Below are positions 9,055-32,704 of a stretch of DNA of 64,000 bases, one piece after another. The DNA is taken from positions 1 to 64,000 of the IMG/VR virus record IMGVR_UViG_3300042868_009074; one strand, 5' to 3'. The notes beneath the pieces were generated by a model, which saw only the letters and a list, made by a program, of their open reading frames with translations, did no database searches and had not been told where the DNA came from. How positions within the stretch are numbered: position 1 is the first letter of the stretch; the number at the start of each line of letters is the position of its first letter. Position numbers and translations under genes: made by a program.

Positions 9055-9079
9055 CTACAAATATAGAAAAGGAAATAAA

Positions 9080-9547
9080 ATGACCGAATTAACCCCACCA
9101 CTTCCTAATATGGATTCACCTAGATCCACAAACGGAATGAAGCAAATGGGAATCATTATGATTCTTCTTGCAGCCGTAGCTTTGCTTATTGGCATTCTCA
9201 TTGCATCACGCGATAACTCATCTGCTCCCGCAGCAACCAATGCTCCAGTCCAAACTTATGCTCCAGCTCCAGTTGTCAACAAGTATGAAGCTTATCTTGA
9301 CCATGTTTACAATAACTCTGGTCAAGCTAATACAATTACTAAAGCTTCTCTTATTGAATATGGCGATACTATTTGTTCTGCCTTAGATAATGGTAGAACA
9401 ATTCCTTATATCGTAGATTATCTTTCAAATAGTTCTTCTAGCGAAACCGATGCTGCTTTGTATGCCTCAGTAATCTTTGGAGCAATTACATATATCTGTG
9501 ATGAATACAAAGGTGATCTTAACCTTTATCTTTCTAACTCTAACTAA
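9080..9547 (+). CDS. Membrane-anchored DUF732-like protein
   Basis: N-terminal TM helix, Ala/Pro linker, YGDTICSALDNG...AITYIC two-Cys pattern typical of actinobacterial DUF732. Confidence 0.6.
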   Translation: MTELTPPLPNMDSPRSTNGMKQMGIIMILLAAVALLIGILIASRDNSSAPAATNAPVQTYAPAPVVNKYEAYLDHVYNNSGQANTITKASLIEYGDTICSALDNGRTIPYIVDYLSNSSSSETDAALYASVIFGAITYICDEYKGDLNLYLSNSN

Positions 9548-9816
9548 TGAAAAAATTCATTAGTAATTTAATTCCAAAAATCAGACCATTTACTGATGGA
9601 TTTGATTACGGTATTAAACATCACAAGACAATTGAAGATCATCACTTCTTCACTTATCCATATGGTTCAGATGAATATAAATTGTTCAAAAAACAAAATG
9701 ATCTTTATCGTAAAGGCATACGTATAGCAAGAGTATATTCTCGCTATAGAAATGAAATTCTTTTACTTATATATGTATTATCGACAGCATTGATATTTTC
9801 ACGCTGCGGTTGGTAA
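9547..9816 (+). CDS. Hypothetical protein with C-terminal TM
   Basis: 89-aa ORF coupled by TAATG. Confidence 0.65.
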   Translation: MKKFISNLIPKIRPFTDGFDYGIKHHKTIEDHHFFTYPYGSDEYKLFKKQNDLYRKGIRIARVYSRYRNEILLLIYVLSTALIFSRCGW

Positions 9817-9822
9817 ATACTT

Positions 9823-9895
9823 TCCCAGATAGCTCAGTTGGCAGAGCAGCGGACTGTTAATCCGCTTGTCGTAGGTTCGAGCCCTACTCTGGGAG
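9823..9895 (+). tRNA. tRNA-Asn(GTT)
   Basis: Canonical cloverleaf TCCCAGA/TCTGGGA, GCGGA-CT GTT AA-TCCGC. Confidence 0.95.
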
Positions 9896-9897
9896 CT

Positions 9898-10101
9898 ATG
9901 ACAAAATCTAAATATGACATGTCTCACCTACTAGGTAGACGTATAGAAATAATTACTTGCACCGATAGATACACTAATCTTGTTCCTGGCTCTCAGGGAA
10001 CAGTAACTGCGGTAGATTCCAACGGAACTGTATTCGCAAAATGGGATACTGGCTCTATTCTAGGCCTCATCCCTGGCGTTGATACCTGGAAATATCTATG
10101 A
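9898..10101 (+). CDS. DUF4314-like small protein (start reassigned to ATG 9898; upstream part of the listed ORF is the tRNA)
   Basis: GRRIE...TDRYTNLVPGSQGTVTAVDSNGTVFAKWDTGSILGLIPGVD pattern. Confidence 0.75.
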   Translation: MTKSKYDMSHLLGRRIEIITCTDRYTNLVPGSQGTVTAVDSNGTVFAKWDTGSILGLIPGVDTWKYL

Positions 10102-10390
10102 TCACTAATATAGTATTGTTATTAAATACTATATTTGCATTGTTTATTATAAGAATAATATACGATGCTATCAAACATAAAGGATAAAATGTTACATTAT
10201 ATTCAATCACTTATTACTCGTTATTCTTTTAAGCGTACTGCTAGACAACGTTATAAATCTTATAACAAAATACATCAAACTCCTTATGGAGTTCCCACTA
10301 GAAATCAAGGTTATTACGAATGAAAGATATACTAATCATATTAGTTATTGCAGGTGTTCTAACTTTTATAGTAGAAAAACTTTGGAAGCC

Positions 10391-10558
10391 ATGACATATA
10401 TTAAAATGCACGTAAAAGATAAACTGGACATTATTGCCCATGTTTTAACTCGCAACGGAGTTACTGTTTGGTATGGTATACCAGAACAAATAGTAGCTGA
10501 GCTTAAAGCTAATGGTTACAAAATTAAAAAACGTAAATCTTTTTCTAAAAATATTTAA
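10391..10558 (+). CDS. Small hypothetical protein
   Basis: Likely start at internal ATG of listed ORF 10286..10558. Confidence 0.55.
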   Translation: MTYIKMHVKDKLDIIAHVLTRNGVTVWYGIPEQIVAELKANGYKIKKRKSFSKNI

Positions 10559-10573
10559 CAACACCATACACCC

Positions 10574-10646
10574 GCGCCTTTAGCTCAGTTGGTAGAGCAG
10601 TGGACTTTTAATCCATGTGTCCCGGGTTCGACCCCCGGAGGGCGCA
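10574..10646 (+). tRNA. tRNA-Lys(TTT)
   Basis: GCGCCTT/AGGGCGC acceptor stem, GTGGA-CT TTT AA-TCCAT. Confidence 0.95.
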
Positions 10647-10648
10647 CT

Positions 10649-10927
10649 ATGACAAATGAACTAAACTCATTAAACGAACTTACAATTGGTGATATCGTAG
10701 GTGACACTAATCGTATCGTTATTGCCTGCACTAAAAAAGCAGAAAGAATTCCGGATGACTCTTATGCATATTGGGTTACCATATGCTTTAAAGAACAAGA
10801 GTATCATCCGTACGTAGTATGGAATGTTATTGCTCGTCCCGAGGGTTTTAGTTCCGTTGAAGGAGATTACTACTTTACTCTGGAAGAAGCTTTAATCCAA
10901 TACAAAAAACGTGGGGGAGAAGCTTAA
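10649..10927 (+). CDS. Hypothetical protein (start reassigned to ATG 10649)
   Basis: ATG begins 3 nt after the tRNA-Lys discriminator; upstream part of listed ORF is the tRNA. Confidence 0.7.
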   Translation: MTNELNSLNELTIGDIVGDTNRIVIACTKKAERIPDDSYAYWVTICFKEQEYHPYVVWNVIARPEGFSSVEGDYYFTLEEALIQYKKRGGEA

Positions 10928-11071
10928 TGAATAACTTAACTCTCACCAATATGATTGACCAGACTATCACCGATATCTCTGGTCAAAACTTTGTCCCCAC
11001 AGAAAAAATTATAGATCTATTATTAGATATTAGATTACACTTACTTATACAGGAAGAAGCAACACCCACTT

Positions 11072-11272
11072 ATGAAAGTTAAACTTAACGTAGAAATTCA
11101 TGCTGATATTCCAGGCGAATTTCAAGATGACGCAGATGCAGTTCAATTACTTCAAGAAGAAATAAACGAACGCTTTGAGATCAATTATGAATATGATAAA
11201 GGCGATCAACCTTCAGTTATGTTCGAATCAGCTCAAATTAAGATTTACATCCCAGGGGCAGGTAAACTATAA
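11072..11272 (+). CDS. Small acidic hypothetical protein
   Basis: 66-aa ORF in packed small-gene run. Confidence 0.6.
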   Translation: MKVKLNVEIHADIPGEFQDDADAVQLLQEEINERFEINYEYDKGDQPSVMFESAQIKIYIPGAGKL

Positions 11273-11564
11273 TGTGCTCAGGCTCAATAGAACAGCATGA
11301 TCTCGATCAATTAGAGCGGGAATTAGAAGAAAAAAAAGCTGTAGATAATTATGTTAATAACTACAGAGTATCTTTTTCTACTTTTAGCTTATTAGTTCCA
11401 TCTTTACGTGATTAATGCCATGCAGTGATGTGCAATCACTAAACATTTTGGGAGCTAACAGTCCCCATTGCTACGGGATCTTATTCGTTTACGACTAGCC
11501 CGTCCACAAAGTGGACATACCAATTCACCTTTTCCCCTAGACCAGGTGGCCACAACTGTCCTAC

Positions 11565-11638
11565 GGGCCCTTAGCTCAGTCGGTTAGAGCATCGGACTCA
11601 TAATCCGTGTGTCCTGGGTTCGAGCCCCAGAGGGCCCA
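11565..11638 (+). tRNA. tRNA with CAT anticodon (Ile2-like or elongator Met)
   Basis: GGGCCCT/AGGGCCC acceptor stem, TCGGA-CT CAT AA-TCCGT; no C1:A72 mismatch, so not initiator. Confidence 0.92.
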
Positions 11639-11782
11639 CTATGAACTTTATTATTTCATTTCTTGAACTCATTGTTATTTTATTAAATACAACAGTCTTC
11701 TTTAGATTTTTATTTATATCATTAGCAATGACTCTATACCTATACTCAGTCAAAAATATACGAACACAAAAGGAATACCCTA

Positions 11783-12097
11783 ATGACAAACACAATCCAT
11801 ACCCCTGAAGCTGCTCTTAAACATTATAAGATTCAACCAGCTTCTGATTCAGATTTTCCATACACTAAAGTTGGTTCTGAAATATACAATGCTGTTGTTA
11901 TACAGTTTATTGATATGGCTGATGATTTAGCTAAGAGTTTAAATAATAAACTTAAATTAGATTATCAAATTTCATCTCTTGATATACTTGATTCTCTAGC
12001 TACTGTTGGCCTAGAGCTTAATGTATTTGAAGAAGATCTTACCGAATACAACTGGCCATCTCTTGCCTATTTGGAAATTCTCAAAGAGAAAAAATAA
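11783..12097 (+). CDS. Hypothetical protein
   Basis: 104-aa ORF, AAGGA upstream. Confidence 0.7.
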   Translation: MTNTIHTPEAALKHYKIQPASDSDFPYTKVGSEIYNAVVIQFIDMADDLAKSLNNKLKLDYQISSLDILDSLATVGLELNVFEEDLTEYNWPSLAYLEILKEKK

Positions 12098-12360
12098 TGC
12101 CTTACATAGAGCAAGATGATCGTGTCTTTTTAGACCAAAGGGTTACATTTAACAATAATGCAATTCAAACTCCTGGCGAATTAAATTATGCTATTACTAA
12201 ACTATTAGATCACTACATTAGCTCTCATGGTTTATCCTATACCAACATCAATGAAGCCATTGGTGTGTTGGAGTGCTCTAAGATGGAATTATACCGTCGT
12301 ATAGCTGTTCCCTATGAAGATATTAAGATGCAAGAAAACGGAGACGTTTATACCGTATGA
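12097..12360 (+). CDS. DUF6899-like phage protein
   Basis: MPYI...GELNYAIT...NEAIGVLECSKMELYRR.AVPYED.K..ENGDVY pattern. Confidence 0.75.
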   Translation: MPYIEQDDRVFLDQRVTFNNNAIQTPGELNYAITKLLDHYISSHGLSYTNINEAIGVLECSKMELYRRIAVPYEDIKMQENGDVYTV

Positions 12361-12536
12361 GTAATAGAGTAAACGTTACCGCTCATGTATATAAGCCATC
12401 TACTGTCTATTATCCTGATAGTTCTAGACAATGTGCTCATGCAGATTGTACCACTCGTCTTTCGATGTATAACTCTACAGAATATTGCTGCACTCATGAA
12501 CGTCAATATCGCAATCTATATGTATATAAGGATTAA
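12357..12536 (+). CDS. Small Cys/His (zinc-finger-like) protein, 59 aa
   Basis: Manual translation includes CAHADCTTRLSMYNSTEYCCTH; ATGA-coupled. Confidence 0.6.
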   Translation: MSNRVNVTAHVYKPSTVYYPDSSRQCAHADCTTRLSMYNSTEYCCTHERQYRNLYVYKD

Positions 12537-12538
12537 TT

Positions 12539-13009
12539 ATGGGAATGGATGTTTACGGCGTTAAGCCTAAAAACGAAGCTGGAGAATACTTTCGCTCCAA
12601 TGTTTGGTTCTGGCACCCTTTATGGGATTGCCTAGAAAACCTTCATCCAACACTGTGTGAGAAGTGCGAATCTCCTCACGACAATTCAGGCTCTGGCCTT
12701 AATGCTAGAGACTCTTTAGCTTTATCTAAGCTTTTAAAAAAAGATTTAGATTCAGGTGTTATCGAAGAATATATTAAAAAATATTATGAAGCTATTGCTT
12801 TAGTTCCTCTTGATGATTGCAAGTTTTGCGACAACAAGGGTACTCGAGACTGGCCTTCTGATGATGGCACAGTCCTCACTAAGCAATGCAACGCTTGTGC
12901 AGGAACTCTCAAAGTTGCTAACTTTGTTACTCATTATCATATGGACATTGAGCTCATGAAAGAGTTTCAAATCTTTCTTGAAAACTGTGGTGGATTTACA
13001 ATTTGTTAA
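12539..13009 (+). CDS. Conserved phage protein with CxxC zinc-ribbon insert
   Basis: MGMDVYG...FRSNVWFWHPLW; CKFC and CNAC. Confidence 0.75.
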   Translation: MGMDVYGVKPKNEAGEYFRSNVWFWHPLWDCLENLHPTLCEKCESPHDNSGSGLNARDSLALSKLLKKDLDSGVIEEYIKKYYEAIALVPLDDCKFCDNKGTRDWPSDDGTVLTKQCNACAGTLKVANFVTHYHMDIELMKEFQIFLENCGGFTIC

Positions 13010-13245
13010 TCAAACCCAAGAACCCTCCTGCTTCTCCTCCTCTCCCTATCAGAGAAAGAATACTTGCCAAATACCATAATGATCTCACCATGATGGATCA
13101 CATAGATGCCTTTGTTCTATACGAAGCAGCTATGCATAAACTATATGTTAAGGTTAACCCCTGGCTTGCCAGAAATAAGTATGGCAAACCTTCGAGAACT
13201 AGAACTCGAAAAGATTTTGAGCCTAAAGAGGAAGCTTATGATTAG
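13003..13245 (+). CDS. Hypothetical protein
   Basis: 80-aa ORF, TTG start. Confidence 0.55.
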   Translation: MLIKPKNPPASPPLPIRERILAKYHNDLTMMDHIDAFVLYEAAMHKLYVKVNPWLARNKYGKPSRTRTRKDFEPKEEAYD

Positions 13246-13455
13246 CTCCCTTTAGCCAAATAGATTTATAGCAGCTAGTGAATTCAAACTTACTACGTGG
13301 TAAAACACAGAAATAAGCCGACTGAATTGCTAACTAAAAGCAATGATGCTAGTGGCCCCATATCGCCCCATTGCCTGCTATAATTAGTTTAAAGGATAAA
13401 ACATGTCTTCACCCTTATTACATTATCGAATACCCACCCTACTTCTCGTTTTCAC

Positions 13456-13529
13456 GAGCTAGTAGCTCAGTTGGTAAGAGCATCATTCTTATAAAATGAA
13501 GGTCCGGGGTTCAATCCCCCGTTAGCTCA
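13456..13529 (+). tRNA. tRNA-Ile(TAT)
   Basis: GAGCTAG/TTAGCTC acceptor stem, TCATT-CT TAT AA-AATGA, CGGGG-TTCAATC-CCCCG. Confidence 0.88.
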
Positions 13530-13554
13530 CAATTAAAATTTATTAGGAGAAATC

Positions 13555-13842
13555 ATGATCGACATAGATCAACTCTATCAAAATGAAATTGATTTATTAA
13601 ATGATAGAATTTCTACTTTTACAGAATTCTCATTTAATATAAACAATCTATTTAAACAAACTCAAGGCGTTCGAAATTCTTTAGACCTAGCTCAAGAATA
13701 TGTTAATAGCAAAGATTATATAAACGGTTATAAGTCTCTTCTTCATTCTATTTCTTTATTAGTAAATATTAATGAAGATATACTATCTCAATATTCTCAA
13801 ATGTCTATAATCCTAAAGGATTCTAATGGCTCGCAAATTTAA
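13555..13842 (+). CDS. Hypothetical coiled-coil protein
   Basis: 95-aa ORF, SD AGGAG. Confidence 0.7.
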   Translation: MIDIDQLYQNEIDLLNDRISTFTEFSFNINNLFKQTQGVRNSLDLAQEYVNSKDYINGYKSLLHSISLLVNINEDILSQYSQMSIILKDSNGSQI

Positions 13843-14236
13843 AGTTAAAGGTCTCAAAAACCTCTCCGATGTTGTTCTTTCTCAAGTATCTTGGAAAGAC
13901 AAAGCACATTGTAAGACCAAAGAAGTTTCTATATTCTTTGGCAACCCTAAATCTAATGAAACTAATCTAGCTGTTTCTATTTGCAAGTCTTGTTCTGTTA
14001 GACAGGACTGTTTCTATGAGGCTATCCAGTATGGATATGACGGTGTTTGGGGCGGTTCTACTGCTGAACAACGACAGTCTATTATAGATGTAGTTATGGA
14101 ATCTAACATAACTAATCTAACAAAAGAAACATCTAATACTCTACTTTCCTATGTAGACATGATAGGTAAAACCAAAAATTCAGCAACAGCTGATCTTATA
14201 AACATCAAATTATCTGAATTGGATCCAAATGTCTAA
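13826..14236 (+). CDS. whiB: WhiB-family transcription regulator
   Basis: WKDKAHC...CKSCSVRQDC...GVWGG...R. Confidence 0.9.
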   Translation: MARKFKVKGLKNLSDVVLSQVSWKDKAHCKTKEVSIFFGNPKSNETNLAVSICKSCSVRQDCFYEAIQYGYDGVWGGSTAEQRQSIIDVVMESNITNLTKETSNTLLSYVDMIGKTKNSATADLINIKLSELDPNV

Positions 14237-16069: not shown

Positions 16070-17884
16070 ATGACTGTCAATTATTCAATTATTCAATCAG
16101 ACGAAGGTGCTATAGCAGTACAATCTACTGTTCAGTCCTTTAATCTAGACCACATTACTAACAAAGATATTGTTTCTTTTTATACCCGGTTCTCTCAATT
16201 CAGTGCTTGGGATACAGGCATTCTTCCAGTAGACGGAAGTGGTGTTCTATCCATACGTACTGCTGGCGAATACACTCAGTTTGCCTATCAGCATAAACCT
16301 GGTCTTTACCATGTTAACTGGGGTGAATCAGAAGGTGCAGCAGCTGCAGCATACTATCTTGCTCAACCATATCGAATCATTATTTGTGACATGAAAGATG
16401 GCAATCTTCTTGGAGCTAGAATGTTCTACTCCCCATATCCCATAACCAACCCATCTCAGCCACTGTACCATGTTAATCTTCCTAATATTAACTGCAATGG
16501 CTACCGTGGCAATGGTGTTGGCTGGATCTGCCTATACCAAAATGAAGATTGGTCTACTCTTCCACTTAATGAACGGATTGTTCGATTCATTGAACGCTGT
16601 TCAGGTGTAGAAACTTACAACGATGCCAATATGTCAGAGACTGATGGTACTCGTTTTTACAAGAAAAATGATAAACCATCTTATTTCTGGGACCCAGTAG
16701 AATGGGAAACCAAATCCGCCGAAGAAGGATATCAATGGACTCTAGATGAAGATCTTTTGATTCCTGTCCTAGTTAAGTCCATGGACAGTCAGTCTGAGCA
16801 TTGCTCTAACGGTGTTCCCCTAACATTTGCTGATGCTCTTGTAGGAGACTACCAGGCTTACTACTATGACAAAAAGCACACTAAGACCATCAATGCTGTC
16901 ATACGTCCTGATAAAGAATTGGATCCTAAAGAAATCCTTTCTTTCTTTGTAGCTTCTTACAACGGAGCTAATTCCCAAAGTAATCCTTTATTAAATAATA
17001 CTTTTGAATCTTCTGAATTAGTTAAACAAAACGTTGGCTCTGCCACTTTTACTGGTTCAGTATTAACTAACGCTCCTGCAGCTCATGCTTCTCATGAAGA
17101 TTCCCCAGATGTTTATTGTGAGACTTGTGAAAATTACTTTACTCAAGATGATATATCTGGAGACTACTATGGCAATAATGTTTGCACTGGTTGCTTAGAA
17201 GACAGTTTTACCTATATTGAATCTGCTGATGCTTATTTTAATCATGAAGATGAAAATATTATATATATAGAACTTCAGGCTACTTCCTTCCATACTGAAT
17301 TTGACTCAGTTGAGATATGTGAAAACTGCAATCAAGCATACGGTAAAGAAGGAAAGAATAACCCTCCTGACAAAGTCATTTGTTTAGATAACAATGACAA
17401 CGTTTGCCCTAAGTGCATTGAGAACTATGCTTACGATAAAGGTATTTCTACTGGGACTTGTGTTTCTTGTGCTAAGTTTGTTGTTACTGAACCAGATTTT
17501 TCTCATCATTACCTCAGCACTCACATTAGTCTTCCATATTATGACTATGAGACTAACGAATCATCGTCAGACGTTAAAGTAGTAACATTCTGTTCTTCTT
17601 GTCAAGACAAACTGCTGATATGTCCATGTGGATTGGTTAAATCTAAATCTTTAGAAGATTTCAATCCTTGTACCCCAATACAATCTGGCACAGGTGAAGA
17701 TGCTATTTCTATAGATAAAGCTTGTGTCTCCTGTGTCAACTTTACCTTTCATGACTCAGAAGAGTTAGAAGCAAATTTTGTTCCTGTATCAATCAGTAAT
17801 TTTACAAATTATCAGAATCAACTTACTTCTATTACTTCAATCCATCAAGGTTTTCAGAAAACTGTAGATGAAGAACCATTTTAA
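16070..17884 (+). CDS. Prokaryotic E2-like (family D-like) protein with C-terminal multi-CxxC region
   Basis: YYLAQPY..I...RMFYSPYPITNPSQPLYHVNLPNIN...GWICL; seven CxxC pairs downstream; lies next to JAB/E1/Ubl. Confidence 0.6.
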   Translation: MTVNYSIIQSDEGAIAVQSTVQSFNLDHITNKDIVSFYTRFSQFSAWDTGILPVDGSGVLSIRTAGEYTQFAYQHKPGLYHVNWGESEGAAAAAYYLAQPYRIIICDMKDGNLLGARMFYSPYPITNPSQPLYHVNLPNINCNGYRGNGVGWICLYQNEDWSTLPLNERIVRFIERCSGVETYNDANMSETDGTRFYKKNDKPSYFWDPVEWETKSAEEGYQWTLDEDLLIPVLVKSMDSQSEHCSNGVPLTFADALVGDYQAYYYDKKHTKTINAVIRPDKELDPKEILSFFVASYNGANSQSNPLLNNTFESSELVKQNVGSATFTGSVLTNAPAAHASHEDSPDVYCETCENYFTQDDISGDYYGNNVCTGCLEDSFTYIESADAYFNHEDENIIYIELQATSFHTEFDSVEICENCNQAYGKEGKNNPPDKVICLDNNDNVCPKCIENYAYDKGISTGTCVSCAKFVVTEPDFSHHYLSTHISLPYYDYETNESSSDVKVVTFCSSCQDKLLICPCGLVKSKSLEDFNPCTPIQSGTGEDAISIDKACVSCVNFTFHDSEELEANFVPVSISNFTNYQNQLTSITSIHQGFQKTVDEEPF

Positions 17885-17916
17885 TAAAATAAAAACAAAT
17901 CTTTATAAGGAGATTT

Positions 17917-19572
17917 ATGTCTAACGATACTAAGGAAATAAAAACCATCACTTTAGATGATTTAAATTACTTTTGGATGCCTAACGGTGCTCCATGCTTT
18001 ATCGCCAATAACTATGATGTTGTTGATGATTACTGCGATACTGTTGAAAGTTTTGGCTTTCAAATTTATTATATCATAACCGATAAAGAAACAAGTAAAA
18101 CTGTTCAAGTCAAAAACGACAAAGGAGTTATGATTCCAACTGAAGTATATGATTATACTCCAGCTGTATTTAAAGTTGTTAATAACTTTACAGGTCGTGC
18201 CGTCATGGAATCCAAAGAACCTTTCGGTACTTCATTCTGCCCAGTAAAAGAAGTAGCAGAGTATACTATGCCTTCAATTCCTCGGATTATTATCGATAAA
18301 CTTGATGAGTTCTTTAGATTAGTTCATGCTCAGCATGGCACTGAGTCTATTGTTATCTTGACTTATGATACCACTAAAGAAGGTTCTGAAGGTTGGGGCG
18401 TCTTAGTCCCCGAGCAAGAGAACAACTCTGTTCACTGCAAGTATGACAATGATTCTATTGCTGCTATTAAACCAGATCATGTCATGATTGTTGGCTCTGT
18501 CCACAGTCATCCTGAGATGTCGGCATATGCTTCTGGTACAGACCATGAAGACCAAGCTGACTTTGATGGCATCCATATTACTTATGGCTGGCAAAAATCA
18601 GTTAATGCTGGAGCTACCCAGTATCACTTGGAGCTTCAGATTGGTGGTTCTAACTATGTACTCAAACCTGAAGATGTATTTGAATACAACCCTCCTCCCA
18701 CTAAGGACCCTGACCCAGAGGTTCTAGAGTGGAGCTCTAAAGTAAAAAAAGTATCCCCCCCGCTTATGGGGGTTTCGGGTACTCAGGTGGCGCATACACC
18801 AAGCCAGTCGTACCAGGCAAGTTGGGCTCTTCAAGCGACCAACTCTCGACCTATTCAAGCTGGTATGGATACGATTAGTTCTTTCGATAGAACTAAATTC
18901 ATATCTGACCTAGGTACAGTTGAAGCAGATGCTGTAGTTGCTATAGAAATAGATGATTCAACTAATCCAGATCGCAACTGCTTGATCTGTTATTTTCCTC
19001 TAACTTTAGCTGATCTCAACACTGGCTTCTGCATGACTTGTGATACTCCTATAATCACTCCAGAAATGGGTCATAGAGATATTCTAGCATTCCTAGACTA
19101 TTACTGTGACCAACGTGCTTTGGATCCTACAGTTCCTTATTATGTTTACTGCATGGATGAAAATAATAATTCAAATAACTTTTTGATTAATATTAAATCT
19201 GCTGGTCAAATTTCTAATCTAGAAGATCCTGAAGTAGAATTATATTCTGGTGCTGACTTTCTAGAGTATACAGTTTGCTGCAGTACGCCATTAACTATGG
19301 TGGAACTGTGCAAGTGCACTGTTACTGTCTTAGAGGAACACGTTGCTGACTTTGACAAAGCACACAAGGAAGTAGACATCTATGATTCTACTGACGACTG
19401 CTTGTCATGTGATAGTTATTATCAAACTTCATGTCCTCAATTTAAAAATGCTTTAGTTAATTATGTAACTTATAATTCTATTGTAAATGTTCAAATAAAA
19501 AAATGCGACAACTATGTCTATTATAAAGACTTAACTGCCGTCAATAATTTCGAAAGTACTTATTATGACTGA
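17917..19572 (+). CDS. JAB/MPN+ metallo-isopeptidase with C-terminal Cys-rich domain (possible -1 frameshift isoform ending at 18878)
   Basis: HGTES (Glu) and GSVHSHPEMSAYASGTD JAMM motif; CLIC, CMTC, CLSC in the C-terminal part. Confidence 0.85.
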   Translation: MSNDTKEIKTITLDDLNYFWMPNGAPCFIANNYDVVDDYCDTVESFGFQIYYIITDKETSKTVQVKNDKGVMIPTEVYDYTPAVFKVVNNFTGRAVMESKEPFGTSFCPVKEVAEYTMPSIPRIIIDKLDEFFRLVHAQHGTESIVILTYDTTKEGSEGWGVLVPEQENNSVHCKYDNDSIAAIKPDHVMIVGSVHSHPEMSAYASGTDHEDQADFDGIHITYGWQKSVNAGATQYHLELQIGGSNYVLKPEDVFEYNPPPTKDPDPEVLEWSSKVKKVSPPLMGVSGTQVAHTPSQSYQASWALQATNSRPIQAGMDTISSFDRTKFISDLGTVEADAVVAIEIDDSTNPDRNCLICYFPLTLADLNTGFCMTCDTPIITPEMGHRDILAFLDYYCDQRALDPTVPYYVYCMDENNNSNNFLINIKSAGQISNLEDPEVELYSGADFLEYTVCCSTPLTMVELCKCTVTVLEEHVADFDKAHKEVDIYDSTDDCLSCDSYYQTSCPQFKNALVNYVTYNSIVNVQIKKCDNYVYYKDLTAVNNFESTYYD

Positions 19573-20320
19573 TCAAAAACGTTTTGTTCTTGTTGGAGCT
19601 GGTGGCATTGGCACTTGGCTTGCAGCTGGACTTGCTCGCATGTTAGAGTTTAAATATCCTGGCTCTGCTCTTATTATCGTCGATGGTGATACATATGAAG
19701 AACGGAACAAAGAGCGTCAATCATTTTCTCAGATGGGAAACAAAGCAGTTGCTACTGCCCATGACTTGACCCAACAGTTTCCTAACACTATGTTTATCCC
19801 AGTCCCTAAATGGGTTGTTGACGACAACTTTGGTGGAGTCACAGATGATCAAGATTCTCCTAAAATTAAAGCTTCTGCTTTGATTACCGAAAACGATGTA
19901 GTCTTTGCTGTTGTTGACAACTTTGCTGCTCGTAAGATTATCTTTGATGCTGCTCAAAACTTAGACAACGTTGACATCTTTACTGGTGGCAACGATGACG
20001 CTTTATTTGGTAGTGTTTATCATTACCAACGCCGTGATGGTCACGATGTAACTGACCATCCAGTGCATACTCATTCTGAATATGAAAATCCTCCAGACAA
20101 AAATCCTGGTGAATTATCATGTCAAGATCGTGCCAAAATCGAAGGTGGTACTCAGCTATTGGCTACCAATATGGCTGTAGCTGCCTTCCTTCTTGGTCGC
20201 GTACAAAAGACAATTGTGTCTAATCAAAATCCCGACGAAGCAGAAATTTATTTTGACCTTGGTATCGGCAAGTCCGAACCATATGATCGTCGACCAACCC
20301 TACAACCTGTAGTACAATAA
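19565..20320 (+). CDS. ThiF/E1-like ubiquitin-like protein activating enzyme
   Basis: GAGGIG, VDGDTYEERNKERQ, DNFAAR, candidate catalytic Cys in LSCQD. Confidence 0.9.
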   Translation: MTDQKRFVLVGAGGIGTWLAAGLARMLEFKYPGSALIIVDGDTYEERNKERQSFSQMGNKAVATAHDLTQQFPNTMFIPVPKWVVDDNFGGVTDDQDSPKIKASALITENDVVFAVVDNFAARKIIFDAAQNLDNVDIFTGGNDDALFGSVYHYQRRDGHDVTDHPVHTHSEYENPPDKNPGELSCQDRAKIEGGTQLLATNMAVAAFLLGRVQKTIVSNQNPDEAEIYFDLGIGKSEPYDRRPTLQPVVQ

Positions 20321-20334
20321 AGGAGATAACAGTT

Positions 20335-20592
20335 ATGACTGCTATGAATAATACCGGAGGAGCAGCACAGTCTGCTTCTGGCCAAATGGCAAATGTCCGT
20401 TTTGGCGTTTACACTCAACCAGCACCAGTTGCTGGAAAGACTGTTCGCGAAGTTCGCGAGCAGTTCTCAAAGCTTTGGGGAATACCTTCTGATGCAGTAG
20501 CATACAAGGGTAAAGACAAGCTCGATGAGGATACTGTTATCGGTGCATCTGATAACGTAGAGTTCCACCGCCGTGCTGGCGAAAAGGGTTAA
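20335..20592 (+). CDS. Ubiquitin-like (beta-grasp) protein ending in Gly
   Basis: VRFG...VAGKTVREVR..F...WGIP...LDEDTVIG.SDNVEF.RRAGEKG; SD AAGGAG; directly after E1. Confidence 0.78.
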   Translation: MTAMNNTGGAAQSASGQMANVRFGVYTQPAPVAGKTVREVREQFSKLWGIPSDAVAYKGKDKLDEDTVIGASDNVEFHRRAGEKG

Positions 20593-20614
20593 TTTAACTC
20601 TTCCCTAAATCTGA

Positions 20615-20662
20615 GGGAGAGTATGCTTAACTTACTTTGAGTGTACTCTCCCACTTTTTTTC
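20615..20662 (+). terminator. Intrinsic terminator after the Ubl gene
   Basis: 15-bp stem GGGAGAGTATGCTTA/TGAGTGTACTCTCCC followed by a T run. Confidence 0.8.
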
Positions 20663-20695
20663 AAAGCCACCAGTTACTAATCAAGGTTTATATTA

Positions 20696-22312
20696 ATGCT
20701 TTTTTCTCAAATAAAATTAGGTCATCCAACTTTATGGATTAAATCTATAGATTCTTTTAAGACTATAGAATCTATTGTAAATTATCCATCTAGAATTTAT
20801 TTTACATTAGATCCAGTTAAAGGTTTTTGTGAATATAAAAACCAAACTTGGAAACCAGTATTGGTAGACATGCCAAACCCAGATGATCCTGGTACAACTA
20901 TTAAAAAAACTACTTTTGATTTTGTAGTTGCAAACGAATTCCTTTCTACTTACCTAGAAGATAAGCCAAAGACATTTATATTTAACATCTTTGCTCAAGC
21001 TCAAGAGTTTGTAGGAAGTTATGCTGGCTTATTTAACCACGCTATGATGCAGTATCGTGATGCCTTTTGGACTAATGATTTATCTGAAATGCCTCTTCAG
21101 TATATTGTTACATCCCCATTTGATTGCCCTGAAGAATTTGCACACTTGTTTAAATTCGTAGAAATGGGCTATCCTTCTTCTGAAGAACTAACATCAGTTC
21201 TTTCTCATATCTCTACCTCTTCTGACGGTCAGTTAGTTAAGCCAGAGACAGTAAAAGATATTGTCAATGCCGGACTTGGTTTATCTGAGTCTGAGTTTAT
21301 CAACTTATCTTTACAATCTGTTTTAGAATGTGGCGAAGTATCTTCTGAATATATTTATTCTCAGAAGATGAGCGACATGAAGAAGAACGGCATACTTGAA
21401 ATCATCAAGCCTAAAGTTCACTTTCAAAATATTGGTGGCCTTGATGCCATTAAAGATTTGATTATACGTAATGCTAATCTATGGCATAACCCAGAACAAG
21501 CTGCTAAGTTTGGTATTTCTCCAATCCGTCGCATGCTTATGGTTGGGGTTCCAGGTACTGGCAAGTCAGCTATCTGTGAAGCTACTGCTAATGCCCTGGG
21601 TTTGGACCTAGCTCGTACTGGCATTAGCCAGGTAATGAACTCTTACATTGGTCAATCAGAGCAGAATATGCGTACTGTATTTAAACAAATCAATGCAATG
21701 GCTCCACTTTGTGTTTGGATCGATGAGTTTGGTCGAGATCTATCCGGTGGCTCCAGCTCGTCTCATGTAGATGGTGGCACTACAGACCGTGTCCACGGAG
21801 AGTTCCTTACAGGCCTTCAGGAGCTTCCTGACAACGTATTCTTGATGTGTGCAGCTAATCAGCTAGAACACCTTAAACCAGAGATGCTTCGTGCAGATCG
21901 TTTCGATAAGATTATGTTTGTAGGCTTGCCTTCATTTAGTGAGCGTTCTGATATTATTAAAATATATCTTTCCGACATTGACACAGATCATGTGTATAAT
22001 TATGATGCGATTTCTCATGCTACTCAGTATTTTACTGGTGCTGAGATCAAGTCTCTTATTAAGGAAGTTAAATTTTACGTTAGTTCTTCAGAACTTCGTG
22101 CAATCAATACCAATGATGTAGTTTCTTATGCTCCTAAAATGAGAAACATTCTTTGGAATAAAAGTCGTCCAATGATTCAAGACCTCTACAAAACAGCTAT
22201 AGATCAATGGGATTGGGCATCGACGGATCAGTTCGAAGATGCTAAACTTATAATGAACCCCAATCGTTCTACAGCACCTGTTTCAGCCCCTAAAATACCA
22301 GTATTTAAATAG
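20696..22312 (+). CDS. AAA+ ATPase (Ycf46/SpoVK/CDC48-like)
   Basis: GVPGTGKS Walker A, VWIDE Walker B, AAN...PEMLRADRFD second region of homology. Confidence 0.92.
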   Translation: MLFSQIKLGHPTLWIKSIDSFKTIESIVNYPSRIYFTLDPVKGFCEYKNQTWKPVLVDMPNPDDPGTTIKKTTFDFVVANEFLSTYLEDKPKTFIFNIFAQAQEFVGSYAGLFNHAMMQYRDAFWTNDLSEMPLQYIVTSPFDCPEEFAHLFKFVEMGYPSSEELTSVLSHISTSSDGQLVKPETVKDIVNAGLGLSESEFINLSLQSVLECGEVSSEYIYSQKMSDMKKNGILEIIKPKVHFQNIGGLDAIKDLIIRNANLWHNPEQAAKFGISPIRRMLMVGVPGTGKSAICEATANALGLDLARTGISQVMNSYIGQSEQNMRTVFKQINAMAPLCVWIDEFGRDLSGGSSSSHVDGGTTDRVHGEFLTGLQELPDNVFLMCAANQLEHLKPEMLRADRFDKIMFVGLPSFSERSDIIKIYLSDIDTDHVYNYDAISHATQYFTGAEIKSLIKEVKFYVSSSELRAINTNDVVSYAPKMRNILWNKSRPMIQDLYKTAIDQWDWASTDQFEDAKLIMNPNRSTAPVSAPKIPVFK

Positions 22313-22967: not shown

Positions 22968-23345
22968 ATGACTGAAGAAAATACTACATCTGTTTTTACA
23001 GTTGATCAATTGAAGGAATACGTAGAATCTTTATTCGTTAACTTTTCTCAAATGATTGATGAGAAGTTTGACGAAATAGATAAAAAAGTAGAAGCTTTTG
23101 AAAAGCAAATAGCAACTCTGGTTATTGGCTTTGGTGAACAAGCTGTCTTTCTTGAGGCTTTGCTAGCCCAACTATCTTTTGCTACTGAAGATGAACAAAA
23201 AGCTTTTCAAACTAACGTTGGAGAAGCTAGAAAACAAATGCTGAAAGTGATGAAAGATGGATCTGAAAACCTCGTGGCCGGTGAGAATGAAAGACTTGCC
23301 TCAGCCATTAATGACGTGGTTAATTCAAAGTCAGCTGAGCTCTGA
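22968..23345 (+). CDS. Hypothetical coiled-coil protein
   Basis: 125-aa helical ORF. Confidence 0.75.
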   Translation: MTEENTTSVFTVDQLKEYVESLFVNFSQMIDEKFDEIDKKVEAFEKQIATLVIGFGEQAVFLEALLAQLSFATEDEQKAFQTNVGEARKQMLKVMKDGSENLVAGENERLASAINDVVNSKSAEL

Positions 23346-23544
23346 AAATAACGGACACTGCGTACTATTCGTAGATCCTCATTCAATTGATTTAATTAAA
23401 GATATATCTAACCTATCTCAGGTATATCCTTTAGTTAAGTCTATGTACCCAGATATGACATCTTTGCATGTCGTATCATTTCCTATAAAGCAATTTATAG
23501 AGAACAAAACTTTATCCTTCCACTCAGTAAAGGCTGTATTATGA
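23257..23544 (+). CDS. Hypothetical protein (start uncertain)
   Basis: Fills gap between flanking genes. Confidence 0.45.
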   Translation: MDLKTSWPVRMKDLPQPLMTWLIQSQLSSENNGHCVLFVDPHSIDLIKDISNLSQVYPLVKSMYPDMTSLHVVSFPIKQFIENKTLSFHSVKAVL

Positions 23545-32095: not shown

Positions 32096-32704
32096 ATGAC
32101 CACTATAATTGCAATTCAAGGGCCAGACTATGCCCTGGTGTGTAGCGATTCTAGAATATCTAGCATGGACGAAGGTGGCTTTACATCCCAGATCACAACA
32201 TTAGGTTCTAACTCAGCTAAAGTAGCAGAGAACAATAAGTATCTATTAGGTGCTGCCGGCGACATGAGAGCTATTAATATACTGCATCATGCTTTTACCC
32301 CACCTATTCCTCCTGTTGGGACTACTGGTAAGAAGTTAGATAACTTTATCACTACTAAGTTTGTTCCATCATTAAGAGAATGCTTTGAGAAACAAGGTTA
32401 TGCGTCTCCTGAGAATGAATCATCTACACATATAGCACAGCATGAATCTACTATTTTGACAGTAGTATCTGGTAACATCTATATTATTGATGGCGACTAT
32501 TCTTGGACTTCAGATGTTAATGGCATTTATGCTATTGGCACTGGCAGTTACTATGCACTGGGTGCTCTACAAGTTCTGTGTTCAACAAAAATAGCGACAC
32601 CAGCTCAAGCTAAAAAGAATGCTTTAAAAGCTATTGCCATATCGGCTAAATACGATCCATATACCGGTGGACCATTCCACTGTTATATTCAGGAAAAATC
32701 TTAA
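32096..32704 (+). CDS. Proteasome-beta/HslV-like Ntn threonine protease
   Basis: M-TTIIAI (N-terminal Thr), SDSRIS, Lys in SAKV, GAAGD, AIGTGS, DPYTGG. Confidence 0.85.
   Translation: MTTIIAIQGPDYALVCSDSRISSMDEGGFTSQITTLGSNSAKVAENNKYLLGAAGDMRAINILHHAFTPPIPPVGTTGKKLDNFITTKFVPSLRECFEKQGYASPENESSTHIAQHESTILTVVSGNIYIIDGDYSWTSDVNGIYAIGTGSYYALGALQVLCSTKIATPAQAKKNALKAIAISAKYDPYTGGPFHCYIQEKS

What the first reader, a model, noticed from the sequence alone, without database searches (positions are those of the whole stretch)
18744..18878. Candidate programmed -1 frameshift in the JAB gene giving short and long isoforms
In-frame slippery run A_AAA_AAA (18744-18750) is followed after 4 nt by a CCCCC/GGGGG hairpin (18755-18772) within a C7 run. 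The -1 frame reads KKSIPPAYGGFGYSGGAYTKPVVPGKLGSSSDQLSTYSSWYGYD* (stop 18876-18878), a natural-looking Gly/Tyr-rich tail, giving about 320 aa. Frame 0 stays open into a Cys-rich domain, giving 551 aa. This could set the ratio of free deconjugase to a JAB-Zn-finger fusion. Alternative: a homopolymer sequencing error has fused two genes, the second starting at ATG 18865.
Basis: partly seen in the sequence, partly recalled or inferred. Interest (0 to 1): 0.72.

Follow-up and report, generated by a model that had tools for sequence, protein, structure and literature searches.

The report
Conserved frameshift site in phage deubiquitinase-like gene
A large lake-water phage and all its close relatives carry a classic ribosome "slip" signal inside a ubiquitin-type protease gene, which most likely yields a long and a short protein from one gene; this site has not been described before but has not been shown experimentally.

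Summary
A7 (18744-18750) sits in the register A_AAA_AAA in the 551-aa JAMM/JAB ORF (17917-19572). After a 4-6 nt spacer comes a C-run/G-run stem-loop. The -1 frame is open for 42 codons and stops at TAG 18876-18878.

Relatives settle the interpretation.
- In 93/93 related loci (77 non-redundant, down to about 40% protein identity, from many separate metagenome assemblies) the heptamer is identical and in the same register.
- All 93 keep a G:C-rich hairpin at the same distance, with loops that vary in sequence and length.
- All 93 keep a -1 tail of 25-48 codons. It is Gly/Tyr/Ser-rich and ends in an aromatic motif.
- All 93 keep frame 0 open into a Cys-rich domain.

The two-gene or homopolymer-error alternative is refuted. 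Independent assemblies show no indel here, and relatives lack a conserved start codon or ribosome-binding site for a second gene.

The best explanation is a canonical programmed -1 ribosomal frameshift giving a 320-aa and a 551-aa isoform. The site lies in a disordered linker just after the protease fold. The gene belongs to a phage module with E2-like, E1, ThiS-like Ubl and Cdc48/PAN-like ATPase genes, with a proteasome-like gene nearby.

Frameshift efficiency and the roles of the two isoforms are untested. I found no paper describing this site.

The parts
17917..19572 (+). Frame-0 ORF, 551 aa (long isoform): JAMM/MPN+ module, disordered linker, then Cys-rich C-terminal domain
   Evidence: ORF list. 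Pfam Prok-JAB at aa 130-225, E = 2e-5. AF2 model: residues 1-258 folded, 259-322 at pLDDT below 50, 323-534 folded. Foldseek matches Rpn11, AMSH and the bacterial Ubl-DUB 8tyx at probability 1.00.
17917..18750 (+). N-terminal part shared by both isoforms (278 aa, ends ...VKK), with the JAMM motif E143 ... H196-S-H198-x7-S206-x2-D209
   Evidence: These residues are invariant in the 28-sequence alignment. Fold matches.
18744..18750 (+). Slippery heptamer A_AAA_AAA (P-site AAA 18745-18747, A-site AAA 18748-18750)
   Evidence: Sequence read directly. Identical and in the same register in 93/93 related loci. Invariant columns in alignment A2. Codon-usage null.
18751..18756 (+). Spacer between the heptamer and the inner stem (GTAT plus the first two C of the run)
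   Evidence: In relatives the C-run begins 3-7 nt (mode 5) after the heptamer.
18757..18772 (+). Stimulatory stem-loop: CCCCC (18757-18761) pairs with GGGGG (18768-18772), loop GCTTAT; a possible outer helix pairs 18750-18756 with 18777-18783
   Evidence: strand folding gives -22 kcal/mol, z = -2.1. All 77 non-redundant relatives fold into a hairpin of -11 to -22 kcal/mol at the same position. Extra inner pairs exceed both controls, and the C4 class has GCCCC...GGGGC.
18750..18878 (+). -1 frame extension: 42 codons (SIPPAYGGFGYSGG...SSWYGYD) plus TAG stop at 18876-18878; C-terminus of the 320-aa short isoform
   Evidence: The -1 frame is open for 25-48 codons in 93/93 loci. All 77 non-redundant tails have an aromatic residue in the last 5 positions, with W at -3 in 41 and Y/W at -2 in 49. 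The substitution phase shifts to the -1 frame in the overlap.
18883..19569 (+). Cys-rich C-terminal domain, present only in the long isoform (12 invariant Cys; no known fold match)
   Evidence: Alignment A4. AF2 pLDDT 84.5. No Foldseek hit at E below 0.09 in PDB or AFDB clusters. No Pfam hit.
16070..17884 (+). Context: upstream 604-aa protein, E2-like N-terminal part (lead only) plus CxxC-rich C-terminal part
   Evidence: ESM Atlas gives a structural and feature link to viral clusters carrying Prok-E2_D. No Pfam, NCBIfam or PHROG hit.
19565..20320 (+). Context: E1-like ThiF-family adenylyltransferase, overlapping the JAB stop by 8 nt
   Evidence: Pfam ThiF, E = 7e-14. Weak match to the PRTRC ThiF family.
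20335..20592 (+). Context: 85-aa ThiS-like ubiquitin-like protein ending in Gly
   Evidence: ESM Atlas score 0.95 with 215 shared features to a ThiS-family cluster. Sequence ends ...GEKG.
20696..22312 (+). Context: Cdc48/PAN-like AAA+ ATPase
   Evidence: Pfam AAA, E = 4e-24. NCBIfam CDC48 and proteasome-activating nucleotidase, about 1e-31, below the family cut-offs.
32096..32704 (+). Context: proteasome/HslV-like peptidase, about 12 kb downstream
   Evidence: phrog_1040 HslV family, E = 6e-24. Pfam Proteasome at 29.7 bits, above the 22.4 cut-off. One copy in each of 5 related near-complete genomes (96-100% by CheckV).
10574..10647 (+). Context: phage-encoded tRNA-Lys(UUU), the tRNA that reads the AAA codons of the slippery site
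   Evidence: ARAGORN on the whole record.

Best explanation
This is a canonical programmed -1 ribosomal frameshift cassette inside the JAMM/JAB peptidase gene of an uncultured lake-water phage of about 210 kb.

Proposed mechanism. With tRNA-Lys in the P and A sites on A_AAA_AAA, the G:C-rich stem-loop starting about 5-7 nt downstream stalls the ribosome. A fraction of ribosomes slip back one base.
- Ribosomes that do not slip make the 551-aa protein: JAMM domain, Thr/Gln/Ala/Pro-rich linker, then a Cys-rich domain.
- Ribosomes that slip make a 320-aa protein: the same JAMM domain, then a 42-aa disordered Gly/Tyr/Ser-rich tail ending in an aromatic motif (...SWYGYD).

The switch point (K277-K278) lies in the disordered linker, 19 residues after the last structured element of the protease fold. 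The two products therefore share a complete catalytic domain and differ only in their C-terminal module.

What is shown:
- the signals themselves;
- their universal, in-register conservation;
- the coding-type conservation of both frames;
- the domain boundaries.

What is inferred:
- that ribosomes actually shift, and at what rate;
- that the fixed ratio of the two isoforms matters for a phage-encoded Ubl-conjugation and unfoldase pathway (E2-like, E1, ThiS-like Ubl, Cdc48/PAN-like ATPase, proteasome-like peptidase). One possibility is a mixed MPN dimer or oligomer carrying only some Cys-rich domains. Another is that the aromatic C-terminal tail acts as a docking peptide.
For: 1. Heptamer. A_AAA_AAA is identical and in register in 93/93 loci and 77/77 non-redundant ones, from 100% down to about 39% protein identity. 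Elsewhere in the same genes AAA is only 67% of Lys codons and GTA only 23% of Val codons. The expected frequency of the site given V-K-K is therefore about 0.10 per lineage.

2. Hairpin. The C-run starts 3-7 nt after the heptamer. There are 4-7 G:C pairs, and loops of 3-18 nt that differ in sequence. MFE is -11 to -22 kcal/mol in all 77. Extra inner pairs average 1.17 per locus, against 0.47 +/- 0.08 for shuffles and 0.83 +/- 0.07 for arm swaps, with none of 1000 controls reaching the observed value. Compensatory pairs include GC/GC, GTA/TAC and AGC/GCT versus TGC/GCA. The C4 class has GCCCC...GGGGC.

3. The -1 frame. It is open for 25-48 codons in all loci, against a median of 4 at random codon positions of the same genes. 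All 77 tails have an aromatic residue in the last 5 positions. The frame-0 reading of the same nucleotides has none in 68/77. In the overlap the substitution phase changes from the frame-0 pattern to the -1 pattern: 59/87/78 against 6639/4709/18909 upstream.

4. Frame 0. It stays open for 267-353 further codons in all loci. The long ORF is what gene callers find in nearly all of the 120 listed clusters, and 119/120 keep VKK..P.

5. Not an error. Independent assemblies, and contigs from three DNA runs that carry SNPs elsewhere, have no indel here.

6. No second gene. There is no conserved start codon or SD motif at the -1 stop.

7. Location. The site lies in a disordered linker between two confidently folded domains.

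8. Within this record the two JAB sites are the extreme outliers among 57 in-frame A_AAA_AAR heptamers.
Against: - There is no direct evidence that either product is made. The one metatranscriptome that holds the gene covers only 18254-18448, and there are no peptides or reporter data.
- The core C-run and G-run also encode Pro-Pro and Gly-Gly, and they never vary. The core stem therefore gives no covariation signal. Only the inner extension pairs do, and that signal is modest.
- The linker is GC-rich and poor in stop codons. A codon shuffle leaves the -1 frame open at least as long as observed in about 8% of trials per locus. The +1 frame is also often open, with a median of 29 codons but an erratic range of 0-75.
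- The Lys-Lys pair is conserved at the protein level in a wider family. Six of the more distant loci fetched (L095, L096, L099, L100, L103, L145) have no slippery site.
- From general knowledge, A_AAA_AAA is less shift-prone than A_AAA_AAG in E. coli.
- The docking test of the tail against the ATPase and the proteasome-like protein gave no answer.
Confidence: 0.85

Rival explanations
1. Transcriptional slippage. RNA polymerase adds one extra A on the A7 run, producing a subpopulation of mRNAs that encode the same 320-aa product without any ribosomal slip.
For: An added A gives exactly the same protein as a -1 ribosomal shift (read from the sequence). The conserved A7 run alone cannot separate the two mechanisms. 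No RNA reads cover the site.
Against: The run is exactly 7 in 93/93 loci. It is never lengthened, although from general knowledge efficient slippage sites in bacteria are usually 9 or more A/T. The run is locked to the codon register. A stable hairpin is conserved at the 5-7 nt distance typical of ribosomal stimulators, and a structure not yet transcribed cannot act on the polymerase.
Confidence: 0.06
2. No recoding. Only the 551-aa protein is made. The A7 run, the hairpin and the open -1 frame are by-products of a conserved Lys-Lys/Pro-Pro/Gly-Gly linker, or form a translational pause or mRNA-stability element.
For: KK, PP and GG are conserved in frame 0, and KK is conserved in distant relatives that lack a slippery site. 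The GC-rich linker leaves other frames open fairly often. The core stem shows no covariation.
Against: Protein-level conservation of KK does not explain 100% AAA-AAA plus a preceding A, with an expected frequency of about 0.10 per lineage. The -1 tails end at a controlled length of 25-48 codons with a conserved aromatic C-terminal motif that is absent from the frame-0 reading. In the overlap the substitution phase follows the -1 frame. The inner stem pairs co-vary.
Confidence: 0.07
3. Assembly or sequencing artefact. The true sequence has A8 or C8 and encodes two separate genes: a 320-aa JAB protein, and a Cys-rich protein starting at ATG 18865.
For: The -1 stop (18876-18878) overlaps an in-frame ATG at 18865 in this particular phage.
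Against: The homopolymer lengths are identical in independent contigs from other samples (L003, L014, L015). Contigs of three DNA runs that carry SNPs elsewhere show no indel at this site. All 93 related loci from many assemblies have the fused frame. Only 18/77 have an ATG near the -1 stop, and only 1/77 has an SD-like motif there.
Confidence: 0.01

Closest known systems
E. coli dnaX tau/gamma programmed -1 frameshift
   Same: Both have an all-A Lys-Lys heptamer and a G:C-rich stem-loop about 6 nt downstream. In both, the shifted ribosome makes the shorter product, which lacks the C-terminal domains of the full-length protein. One gene therefore yields two proteins with a common N-terminus.
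   Different: The heptamer here is A_AAA_AAA, not A_AAA_AAG. An upstream SD-like stimulator is present in only 39/77 relatives, so it is not a conserved part of the cassette. The -1 frame runs for 25-48 conserved codons, whereas in dnaX it stops after one codon. The gene family is unrelated, and Rfam's frameshift-element families give no hit.
Tail assembly chaperone G/GT frameshift of lambda-like phages (Xu, Hendrix and Duda 2004; cited from my own knowledge)
   Same: Both are -1 frameshifts in a phage gene, conserved across very divergent relatives. In G/GT the frameshift gives two proteins with a shared N-terminus at a fixed ratio, and both are needed in one assembly process. That is the functional logic I infer here.
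   Different: In G/GT the shift gives the longer product. The heptamers vary (for example G_GGA_AAG) and often lack a strong downstream structure. G/GT is a morphogenesis gene, not an enzyme of a Ubl pathway.
IS3-family transposase OrfA/OrfAB frameshift
   Same: Both use an A_AAA_AAR heptamer followed by a hairpin or pseudoknot in a mobile genetic element.
   Different: In IS3 the shift fuses two ORFs to make the active enzyme. Here the shift truncates the protein and swaps its C-terminal module.
JAMM/MPN+ deubiquitinase-like peptidases (Rpn11, AMSH, archaeal JAMM1, bacterial Bil-type Ubl-DUB 8tyx, CBASS Cap3, PRTRC protein A)
   Same: The E...HxHx7Sx2D motif is invariant here. The fold matches these proteins at Foldseek probability 1.00. 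The gene sits next to E1, Ubl and E2-like genes, as in prokaryotic Ubl operons.
   Different: Sequence identity is 8-20%. The Pfam score is just under the cut-off (24.8 against 25 bits). The module has an extra N-terminal beta-rich region of about 120 aa. It is fused to a Cys-rich domain of unassigned fold. No frameshift has been reported for any of these families in the library I searched.
Prokaryotic E2-JAB-E1-Ubl operons (Iyer, Burroughs and Aravind 2006, PMC1779556; PRTRC cassette; Bil systems)
   Same: The gene set and gene order are the same kind: E2-like, JAB, ThiF-type E1 and a small beta-grasp protein.
   Different: This module is encoded by a virus rather than by a host defence island or plasmid. 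It is joined to a Cdc48/PAN-like ATPase and lies near a proteasome-like peptidase. Matches to the PRTRC models are far below their cut-offs.

Membership tests
Canonical programmed -1 ribosomal frameshift cassette | X_XXY_YYZ heptamer in the zero-frame register | tested here: met
   A_AAA_AAA lies in the register GTA AAA AAA. It is in the same register in 93/93 relatives.
Canonical programmed -1 ribosomal frameshift cassette | Stable RNA structure starting about 5-9 nt downstream of the heptamer | tested here: met
   The stem starts 5-7 nt downstream, with 4-7 G:C pairs plus extensions. MFE is -11 to -22 kcal/mol in 77/77. Covariation is seen only in the extension pairs.
Canonical programmed -1 ribosomal frameshift cassette | Suppressed synonymous variation at the site compared with the rest of the gene | tested here: met
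   The site is 100% AAA-AAA with a preceding A, against 67% AAA and 23% GTA elsewhere in the same genes. These are invariant columns in alignment A2.
Canonical programmed -1 ribosomal frameshift cassette | The -1 ORF is conserved as coding sequence | tested here: met
   Length is 25-48 codons in all loci. The C-terminal aromatic motif is present in 77/77. Mean pairwise identity is 0.34, against 0.27 for the frame-0 reading. The substitution phase follows the -1 frame. Caveat: the linker composition keeps alternative frames open fairly often.
Canonical programmed -1 ribosomal frameshift cassette | Both protein products are detected, and the shift depends on the heptamer and the structure | not testable with these tools
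   The RNA contig covers only 18254-18448. No proteomic or reporter data are available.
dnaX-type frameshift site | Upstream Shine-Dalgarno-like stimulator about 10 nt 5' of the heptamer | tested here: not met
   An SD-like 4-mer ends 6-14 nt upstream in only 39/77 relatives. In this window a GGAG is present at 18731-18734, but it arises from the Glu-Trp-Ser codons.
JAMM/MPN+ metallopeptidase | Catalytic motif E ... H-x-H-x7-S-x2-D | tested here: met
   E143, H196, H198, S206 and D209 are invariant in 28 diverse sequences.
JAMM/MPN+ metallopeptidase | MPN fold and family profile match | tested here: met
   Foldseek matches Rpn11, AMSH, archaeal Rpn11-like and the bacterial Ubl-DUB at probability 1.00, E about 1e-5. 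Pfam Prok-JAB gives E = 2e-5 at 24.8 bits, just under the 25-bit cut-off.
JAMM/MPN+ metallopeptidase | Isopeptidase or Ubl-processing activity | not testable with these tools
   This needs an enzyme assay with the neighbouring 85-aa Ubl.
Prokaryotic Ubl-conjugation operon (E1/E2/JAB/Ubl) | Adjacent ThiF-type E1 and a beta-grasp Ubl with a C-terminal Gly | tested here: met
   Pfam ThiF, E = 7e-14. The 85-aa protein ends in Gly and scores 0.95 with 215 shared features to a ThiS-family cluster. The same neighbours are found in distant relatives.
Prokaryotic Ubl-conjugation operon (E1/E2/JAB/Ubl) | E2/UBC-fold protein with a catalytic Cys | tested here: inconclusive
   There is only an Atlas lead to clusters in which 13% of members carry Prok-E2_D (feature score 0.78; TM 0.40 by query and 0.67 by hit). 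No HMM hit.
PRTRC cassette | Matches to the PRTRC_A and PRTRC_ThiF equivalog models above their cut-offs | tested here: not met
   The scores are 21.4 bits against a 101.8 cut-off, and 29.8 bits against 144.75. It is related, but not a member.

The most novel reading that the evidence does not exclude
The frameshift could be a tunable switch inside a virus-encoded ubiquitin-proteasome-like pathway made of an E2-like protein, E1, a ThiS-like Ubl, an Rpn11-like JAMM peptidase, a Cdc48/PAN-like unfoldase and a proteasome-like peptidase.

The short isoform's aromatic C-terminus (W/Y-Y/W-x) resembles the HbYX docking peptides of proteasome activators. It might tether a free deubiquitinase to the unfoldase or peptidase ring, while the long isoform carries a new Cys-rich targeting or ligase-like domain.

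The ratio of the two could change during infection with the supply of the phage's own tRNA-Lys(UUU), which reads the slippery codons.
Probability: 0.1. Interest if true: 0.85.

Novelty: new member of a known kind. Interest (0 to 1): 0.62.

Why it matters
Well-supported recoding sites in phages are few and are mostly in structural genes, such as tail chaperones and some capsid genes. This one is very deeply conserved and sits in an enzyme gene of a ubiquitin-like modification module, in a widespread group of freshwater phages of about 200-216 kb.

It corrects the annotation of hundreds of metagenomic protein clusters, because a 320-aa product is missing from every gene call. It offers a clean natural A_AAA_AAA-plus-hairpin cassette with about 80 sequence variants for studying frameshift stimulators.

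It also suggests that the stoichiometry of two forms of a JAMM deubiquitinase-like enzyme matters for what the phage does with its own Ubl, E1, E2-like protein, unfoldase and proteasome-like peptidase. Interest in these pathways has grown since the recent descriptions of bacterial Ubl conjugation in anti-phage defence.

Tried and rejected
- Curated phage genomes. Searching with the gene's DNA and protein found no match, so these phages are known only from metagenomes.
- Rfam at permissive E-values over 18600-19000 found no family.
- PHROGs has no family for the JAB, E1, Ubl or E2-like proteins.
- MAFFT alignment of the site region came out ungapped, so the 3' arms were misaligned. It was unsuitable for the count of structure pairs or RNAalifold. 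I used an arm-anchored script instead.
- Complex prediction of the 44-aa -1 tail with the AAA ATPase and the proteasome-like protein scored 0.00. The tool's verdict was 'no answer', which is evidence neither for nor against binding.
- Fold searches of the Cys-rich domain in PDB and AFDB clusters gave nothing below E = 0.09 or above TM 0.3. BLASTP against the Cys-rich part of the upstream protein was not significant.
- I first treated the second copy at 233-235 kb as a paralogue in the same genome. I rejected this because the record's two ends are colinear and complete relatives have a single copy.
- I considered the upstream GGAG as a dnaX-like stimulator and rejected it as a conserved element.
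The two pieces were analysed separately.
- Six literature searches found no description of this site or of this phage module.
Full report
**1. The observation**

The window sequence shows A7 at 18744-18750. The 551-aa ORF 17917-19572 reads GTA AAA AAA GTA there, so the register is A_AAA_AAA. GTAT follows, then C7 (18755-18761), GCTTAT and G5 (18768-18772).

Reading from the heptamer in the -1 frame gives KK, then 42 codons, then TAG at 18876-18878.

ViennaRNA folds 18744-18800 at -22 kcal/mol (z = -2.1). The inner helix pairs 18757-18761 with 18768-18772, and an outer helix pairs 18750-18756 with 18777-18783.

The record is AT-rich (36.7% GC), so A7 alone is not special. There are 57 in-frame A_AAA_AAR heptamers in ORFs of at least 100 aa. 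The two JAB-gene sites rank first and second for downstream hairpin stability. Their -1 ORFs are 36 and 42 codons, against a median of 5.

**2. What the gene is**

Pfam finds Prok-JAB at residues 130-225 (E = 2e-5, 24.8 bits against a 25-bit cut-off). The JAMM residues E143, H196, H198, S206 and D209 are invariant in 28 diverse homologues.

An AlphaFold2 model built with that alignment has three parts:
- a confident N-terminal module, residues 1-258;
- a disordered stretch, 259-322 (pLDDT below 50);
- a folded C-terminal domain, 323-534.

Foldseek matches the N-terminal module to Rpn11, an archaeal Rpn11 homologue, AMSH/Sst2, CSN5, PfJAMM1 and a bacterial Ubl-deubiquitinase (8tyx), all at probability 1.00.

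The slippery Lys-Lys is residues 277-278. That places it inside the disordered linker, 19 residues after the last structured element of the protease fold.

The C-terminal domain modelled alone reaches pLDDT 84.5 and has 12 invariant Cys. It has no Pfam hit and no fold match in PDB or AFDB clusters.

**3. Relatives**

The curated phage collection has no match. IMG/VR gave 11 loci, JGI and other metagenomes gave 80, and the protein database gave 481 clusters.

Almost all of the 120 best clusters are 540-630 aa, which is the fused frame-0 ORF. Of these, 119 keep V-K-K-x-x-P.

In a script over all loci, 93 of 93 have these four features:
- A_AAA_AAA in the same register;
- a C-run followed by a G-run;
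- a -1 frame open for 25-48 codons;
- frame 0 open for another 267-353 codons.

After removing near-duplicates, 77 loci remain, ranging from 100% down to about 39% protein identity.

*Codon usage.* In the same genes Lys is AAA in 67% of cases and Val is GTA in 23%. Given V-K-K, the heptamer would be expected in about 10% of lineages, not 100%.

*The -1 frame.* At random codon positions of the same genes, the -1 frame is open for a median of 4 codons, and for 25 or more in only 3.6% of positions.

*A stricter null.* Shuffling the frame-0 codons of the linker gives about 8% per locus. The +1 frame is open erratically, from 0 to 75 codons. The linker's composition therefore explains part of the openness, but not its presence in every lineage or its narrow length range.

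**4. The hairpin**

The C-run starts 3-7 nt (mode 5) after the heptamer. The commonest arms are C6/G5 and C6/G6. The sequence between the arms is 3-18 nt long and differs between lineages. All 77 loci fold into a hairpin of -11 to -22 kcal/mol at that position.

The core C and G runs never vary, and they also encode Pro-Pro and Gly-Gly. The core therefore says nothing about structure.

The bases just inside the core do co-vary. Contiguous extra pairs average 1.17 per locus. Shuffling gives 0.47 +/- 0.08 and swapping 3' arms between loci gives 0.83 +/- 0.07. None of 1000 controls reaches the observed value.

Examples are GC/GC, GTA/TAC, AC/GT, and AGC/GCT versus TGC/GCA. Lineages with only four C have G before the run and C after the G-run, giving GCCCC...GGGGC.

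An upstream SD-like motif is present in only 39/77 loci, so it is not part of the conserved cassette. Rfam has no matching family.

**5. Is the -1 frame coding?**

The tails are 18% Ser, 16% Gly and 11% Tyr. They begin S-x-P-P-x-x-G-G.

All 77 tails have at least one aromatic residue in the last five positions, and 59 have two or more. W is at -3 in 41 tails, and Y or W at -2 in 49. Typical endings are WYD, WYS, WYY, WWQ and WGI. The frame-0 translation of the same nucleotides has no aromatic residue there in 68/77.

Mean pairwise identity is 0.34 for the tails and 0.27 for the frame-0 peptides.

Between close relatives, substitutions upstream follow the usual pattern for a frame-0 gene: 6639, 4709 and 18909 at codon positions 1, 2 and 3. 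In the overlap the counts are 59, 87 and 78. The fewest fall at -1-frame position 2 and the most at -1-frame position 3. This comes from only 17 sequence pairs.

Both frames therefore look constrained, with the -1 frame dominant in the overlap. The frame-0 reading there is a Thr/Pro/Ala/Gln-rich spacer.

**6. Artefact and two-gene models**

- L003, from another sample, matches the gene at 100% protein identity. L014 (98%) and L015 (100% over the residues it covers) are identical or near-identical contigs from other metagenome assemblies. All three have the same A7 and C7.
- Contigs of three independent DNA runs cross the site with SNPs elsewhere but no inserted or deleted letter.
- A second gene would need a start codon. 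Only 18/77 loci have an in-frame ATG within 45 nt of the -1 stop. Only 1/77 has any start codon there preceded by an SD-like 4-mer. By contrast 73/77 JAB gene starts have one.

The ATG at 18865 is therefore incidental.

**7. Ribosomal or transcriptional slippage?**

An extra A in the mRNA would give the same protein, and no RNA reads cover the site. Three things favour the ribosome:
- the run is always exactly seven;
- it is always in the codon register;
- it is always followed, at the classical distance, by a stable structure that could not act on the polymerase before being transcribed.

I give transcriptional slippage about 6%.

**8. Limits of the cassette**

A search of all protein representatives with the N-terminal 278 aa finds 1,472 relatives. 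The more distant ones have 400-500 aa ORFs and the same neighbours: a large upstream protein, ThiF, an ~83-aa protein, and in one case an AAA gene further downstream.

Among the DNA fetched for them, the picture is mixed:
- Six loci have no slippery site and carry a Gly/Tyr/Ser-rich linker in frame 0 (L095, L096, L099, L100, L103, L145).
- Four do have one. L097 and L101 have A_AAA_AAG, and L097 is followed by a -21 kcal/mol stem. L098 and L142 have A_AAA_AAA. Their short -1 tails again end in aromatic residues (WCGYL, YYGYI, NWWGL, WYHGYL).

Apart from L096, which belongs to the distant clade, all 45 loci in that scan with ORFs of at least 520 aa have the site. The cassette is thus universal in the 540-630 aa clade and patchy beyond it.

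**9. Context**

- Upstream is a 604-aa protein with an E2-like lead (Prok-E2_D) and a CxxC-rich tail.
- Downstream come a ThiF-type E1, an 85-aa ThiS-like protein ending in Gly and a Cdc48/PAN-like AAA ATPase.
- About 12 kb further on is a proteasome/HslV-like peptidase, present once in each of five related near-complete genomes (96-100% by CheckV).
- The phage encodes tRNA-Lys(UUU) at 10574-10647.
- It also encodes a WhiB regulator, which is typical of phages of Actinobacteria (my own knowledge).

**10. Mechanism and role**

*Shown:* a complete, canonical -1 frameshift cassette. It is conserved far beyond what coding of either frame requires. It lies exactly at the boundary between a catalytic domain and its C-terminal module.

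*Inferred:* a fixed fraction of ribosomes shift. The result is a 320-aa JAMM enzyme with a flexible tail ending in an aromatic motif, and a 551-aa JAMM enzyme carrying a Cys-rich domain.

The nearest functional parallels are dnaX tau/gamma and the phage G/GT chaperones. In dnaX the shift gives a truncated product that lacks domains. In G/GT the frameshift fixes the ratio of two proteins in one assembly. Because MPN domains commonly act as dimers (my own knowledge), mixed long/short oligomers are plausible.

Long-isoform C-termini are also often Tyr-rich (YYD, YYN, NYGV), with 46/77 having two or more aromatic residues in the last six. A shared C-terminal docking peptide is therefore possible. 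A docking prediction against the ATPase and the proteasome-like protein gave no answer.

**11. Novelty**

Six full-text searches found no description of a frameshift in a JAB/JAMM gene or of this phage module. The mechanism is of a well-known kind. The instance, its gene family and its depth of conservation are new.

**Confidence:** programmed -1 ribosomal frameshifting, 0.85.

Noticed in passing
window 1-51000 versus G000:C1:208000-267600 (L002, L094): The 267,766-bp record is colinear with itself. Genes in the first ~51 kb recur in the same order and strand in the last ~60 kb at 25-82% protein identity, at an offset of about 207-217 kb. Related genomes, three of them with terminal repeats, are 203-216 kb and carry one JAB and one proteasome-like gene each. 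The record is therefore probably about 1.25 genome lengths, joining two related phages, and not a 268-kb genome with an internal duplication. The CheckV '100% complete' label hides this.
   Followed up: yes
window 16070-22312 and 32096-32704: The phage carries a ubiquitin-proteasome-like gene set: an E2-like protein, a JAMM peptidase, a ThiF E1, a ThiS-like Ubl ending in Gly, a Cdc48/PAN-like AAA ATPase and a proteasome/HslV-like peptidase. The JAB and the proteasome-like gene were each found once in five related genomes. The E1 and Ubl-size genes (and in one locus the AAA gene) also flank the JAB gene in distant relatives. I found no paper on such a module in phages.
   Followed up: partly
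window 8972-13530, especially 10574-10647: There is a cluster of phage tRNA genes: Leu-UAA, Asn, Lys-UUU, Met and Ile-UAU, with Arg-UCU, Gly-UCC and Ser-GCU further on. tRNA-Lys(UUU) reads the AAA codons of the slippery site and could influence frameshift efficiency. This was not tested.
   Followed up: no
window 13826-14236: This is a WhiB-family regulator (Pfam 52.6 bits), also found upstream of the module in distant relatives (L097, L098). It points to an actinobacterial host for this freshwater phage group.
   Followed up: partly
window 19549-19569 and the equivalent ends in L002-L093: The long isoform also tends to end in a Tyr-rich motif (here ...STYYD; elsewhere YYYD, LYYN, NYGV). In 46/77 relatives there are two or more aromatic residues in the last six, against a background aromatic frequency of 10.7%. 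Both isoforms may therefore carry a similar C-terminal peptide.
   Followed up: partly
L095, L096, L099, L100, L103, L145 versus L097, L098, L101, L142: Distant homologues (400-500 aa ORFs) split into two groups. One has no slippery site and a Gly/Tyr/Ser-rich linker in frame 0. The other has A_AAA_AAG or A_AAA_AAA and short -1 tails that end in aromatic residues. This suggests the Gly/Tyr-rich segment was ancestrally in frame and that the cassette was gained or lost more than once.
   Followed up: partly
window 22968-23345 and 23257-23544: Two ORFs overlap by about 60-90 nt in different frames, both conserved in the second copy. The overlap is strongly conserved at the nucleotide level. The likeliest reading is ordinary overlapping genes, with the second starting at the internal ATG (MKDLPQPL...). 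I did not examine it for recoding.
   Followed up: partly
window 18733-18747 (run X8): Logan contigs of one lake metagenome break exactly at the conserved motif around the heptamer, and a loose end at 18778 continues into a relative's sequence. The invariant motif of about 25 nt, shared by co-occurring strains, acts as an assembly-graph branch point. That may also be how chimeric contigs such as this record arise.
   Followed up: no
window 61866-61915: Another A-run is followed by TTCCCC...GGGGAA, an inverted repeat in an apparently intergenic stretch. On the minus strand it reads as a hairpin followed by a T-run, so it is probably an intrinsic terminator and unrelated to the frameshift site.
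   Followed up: no
window 7013-8530: This is a subtilase-family (Peptidase_S8, E = 4e-33) protease gene. Its homologue at the record's other end (about 220.3-221.9 kb) is 43% identical.
   Followed up: no
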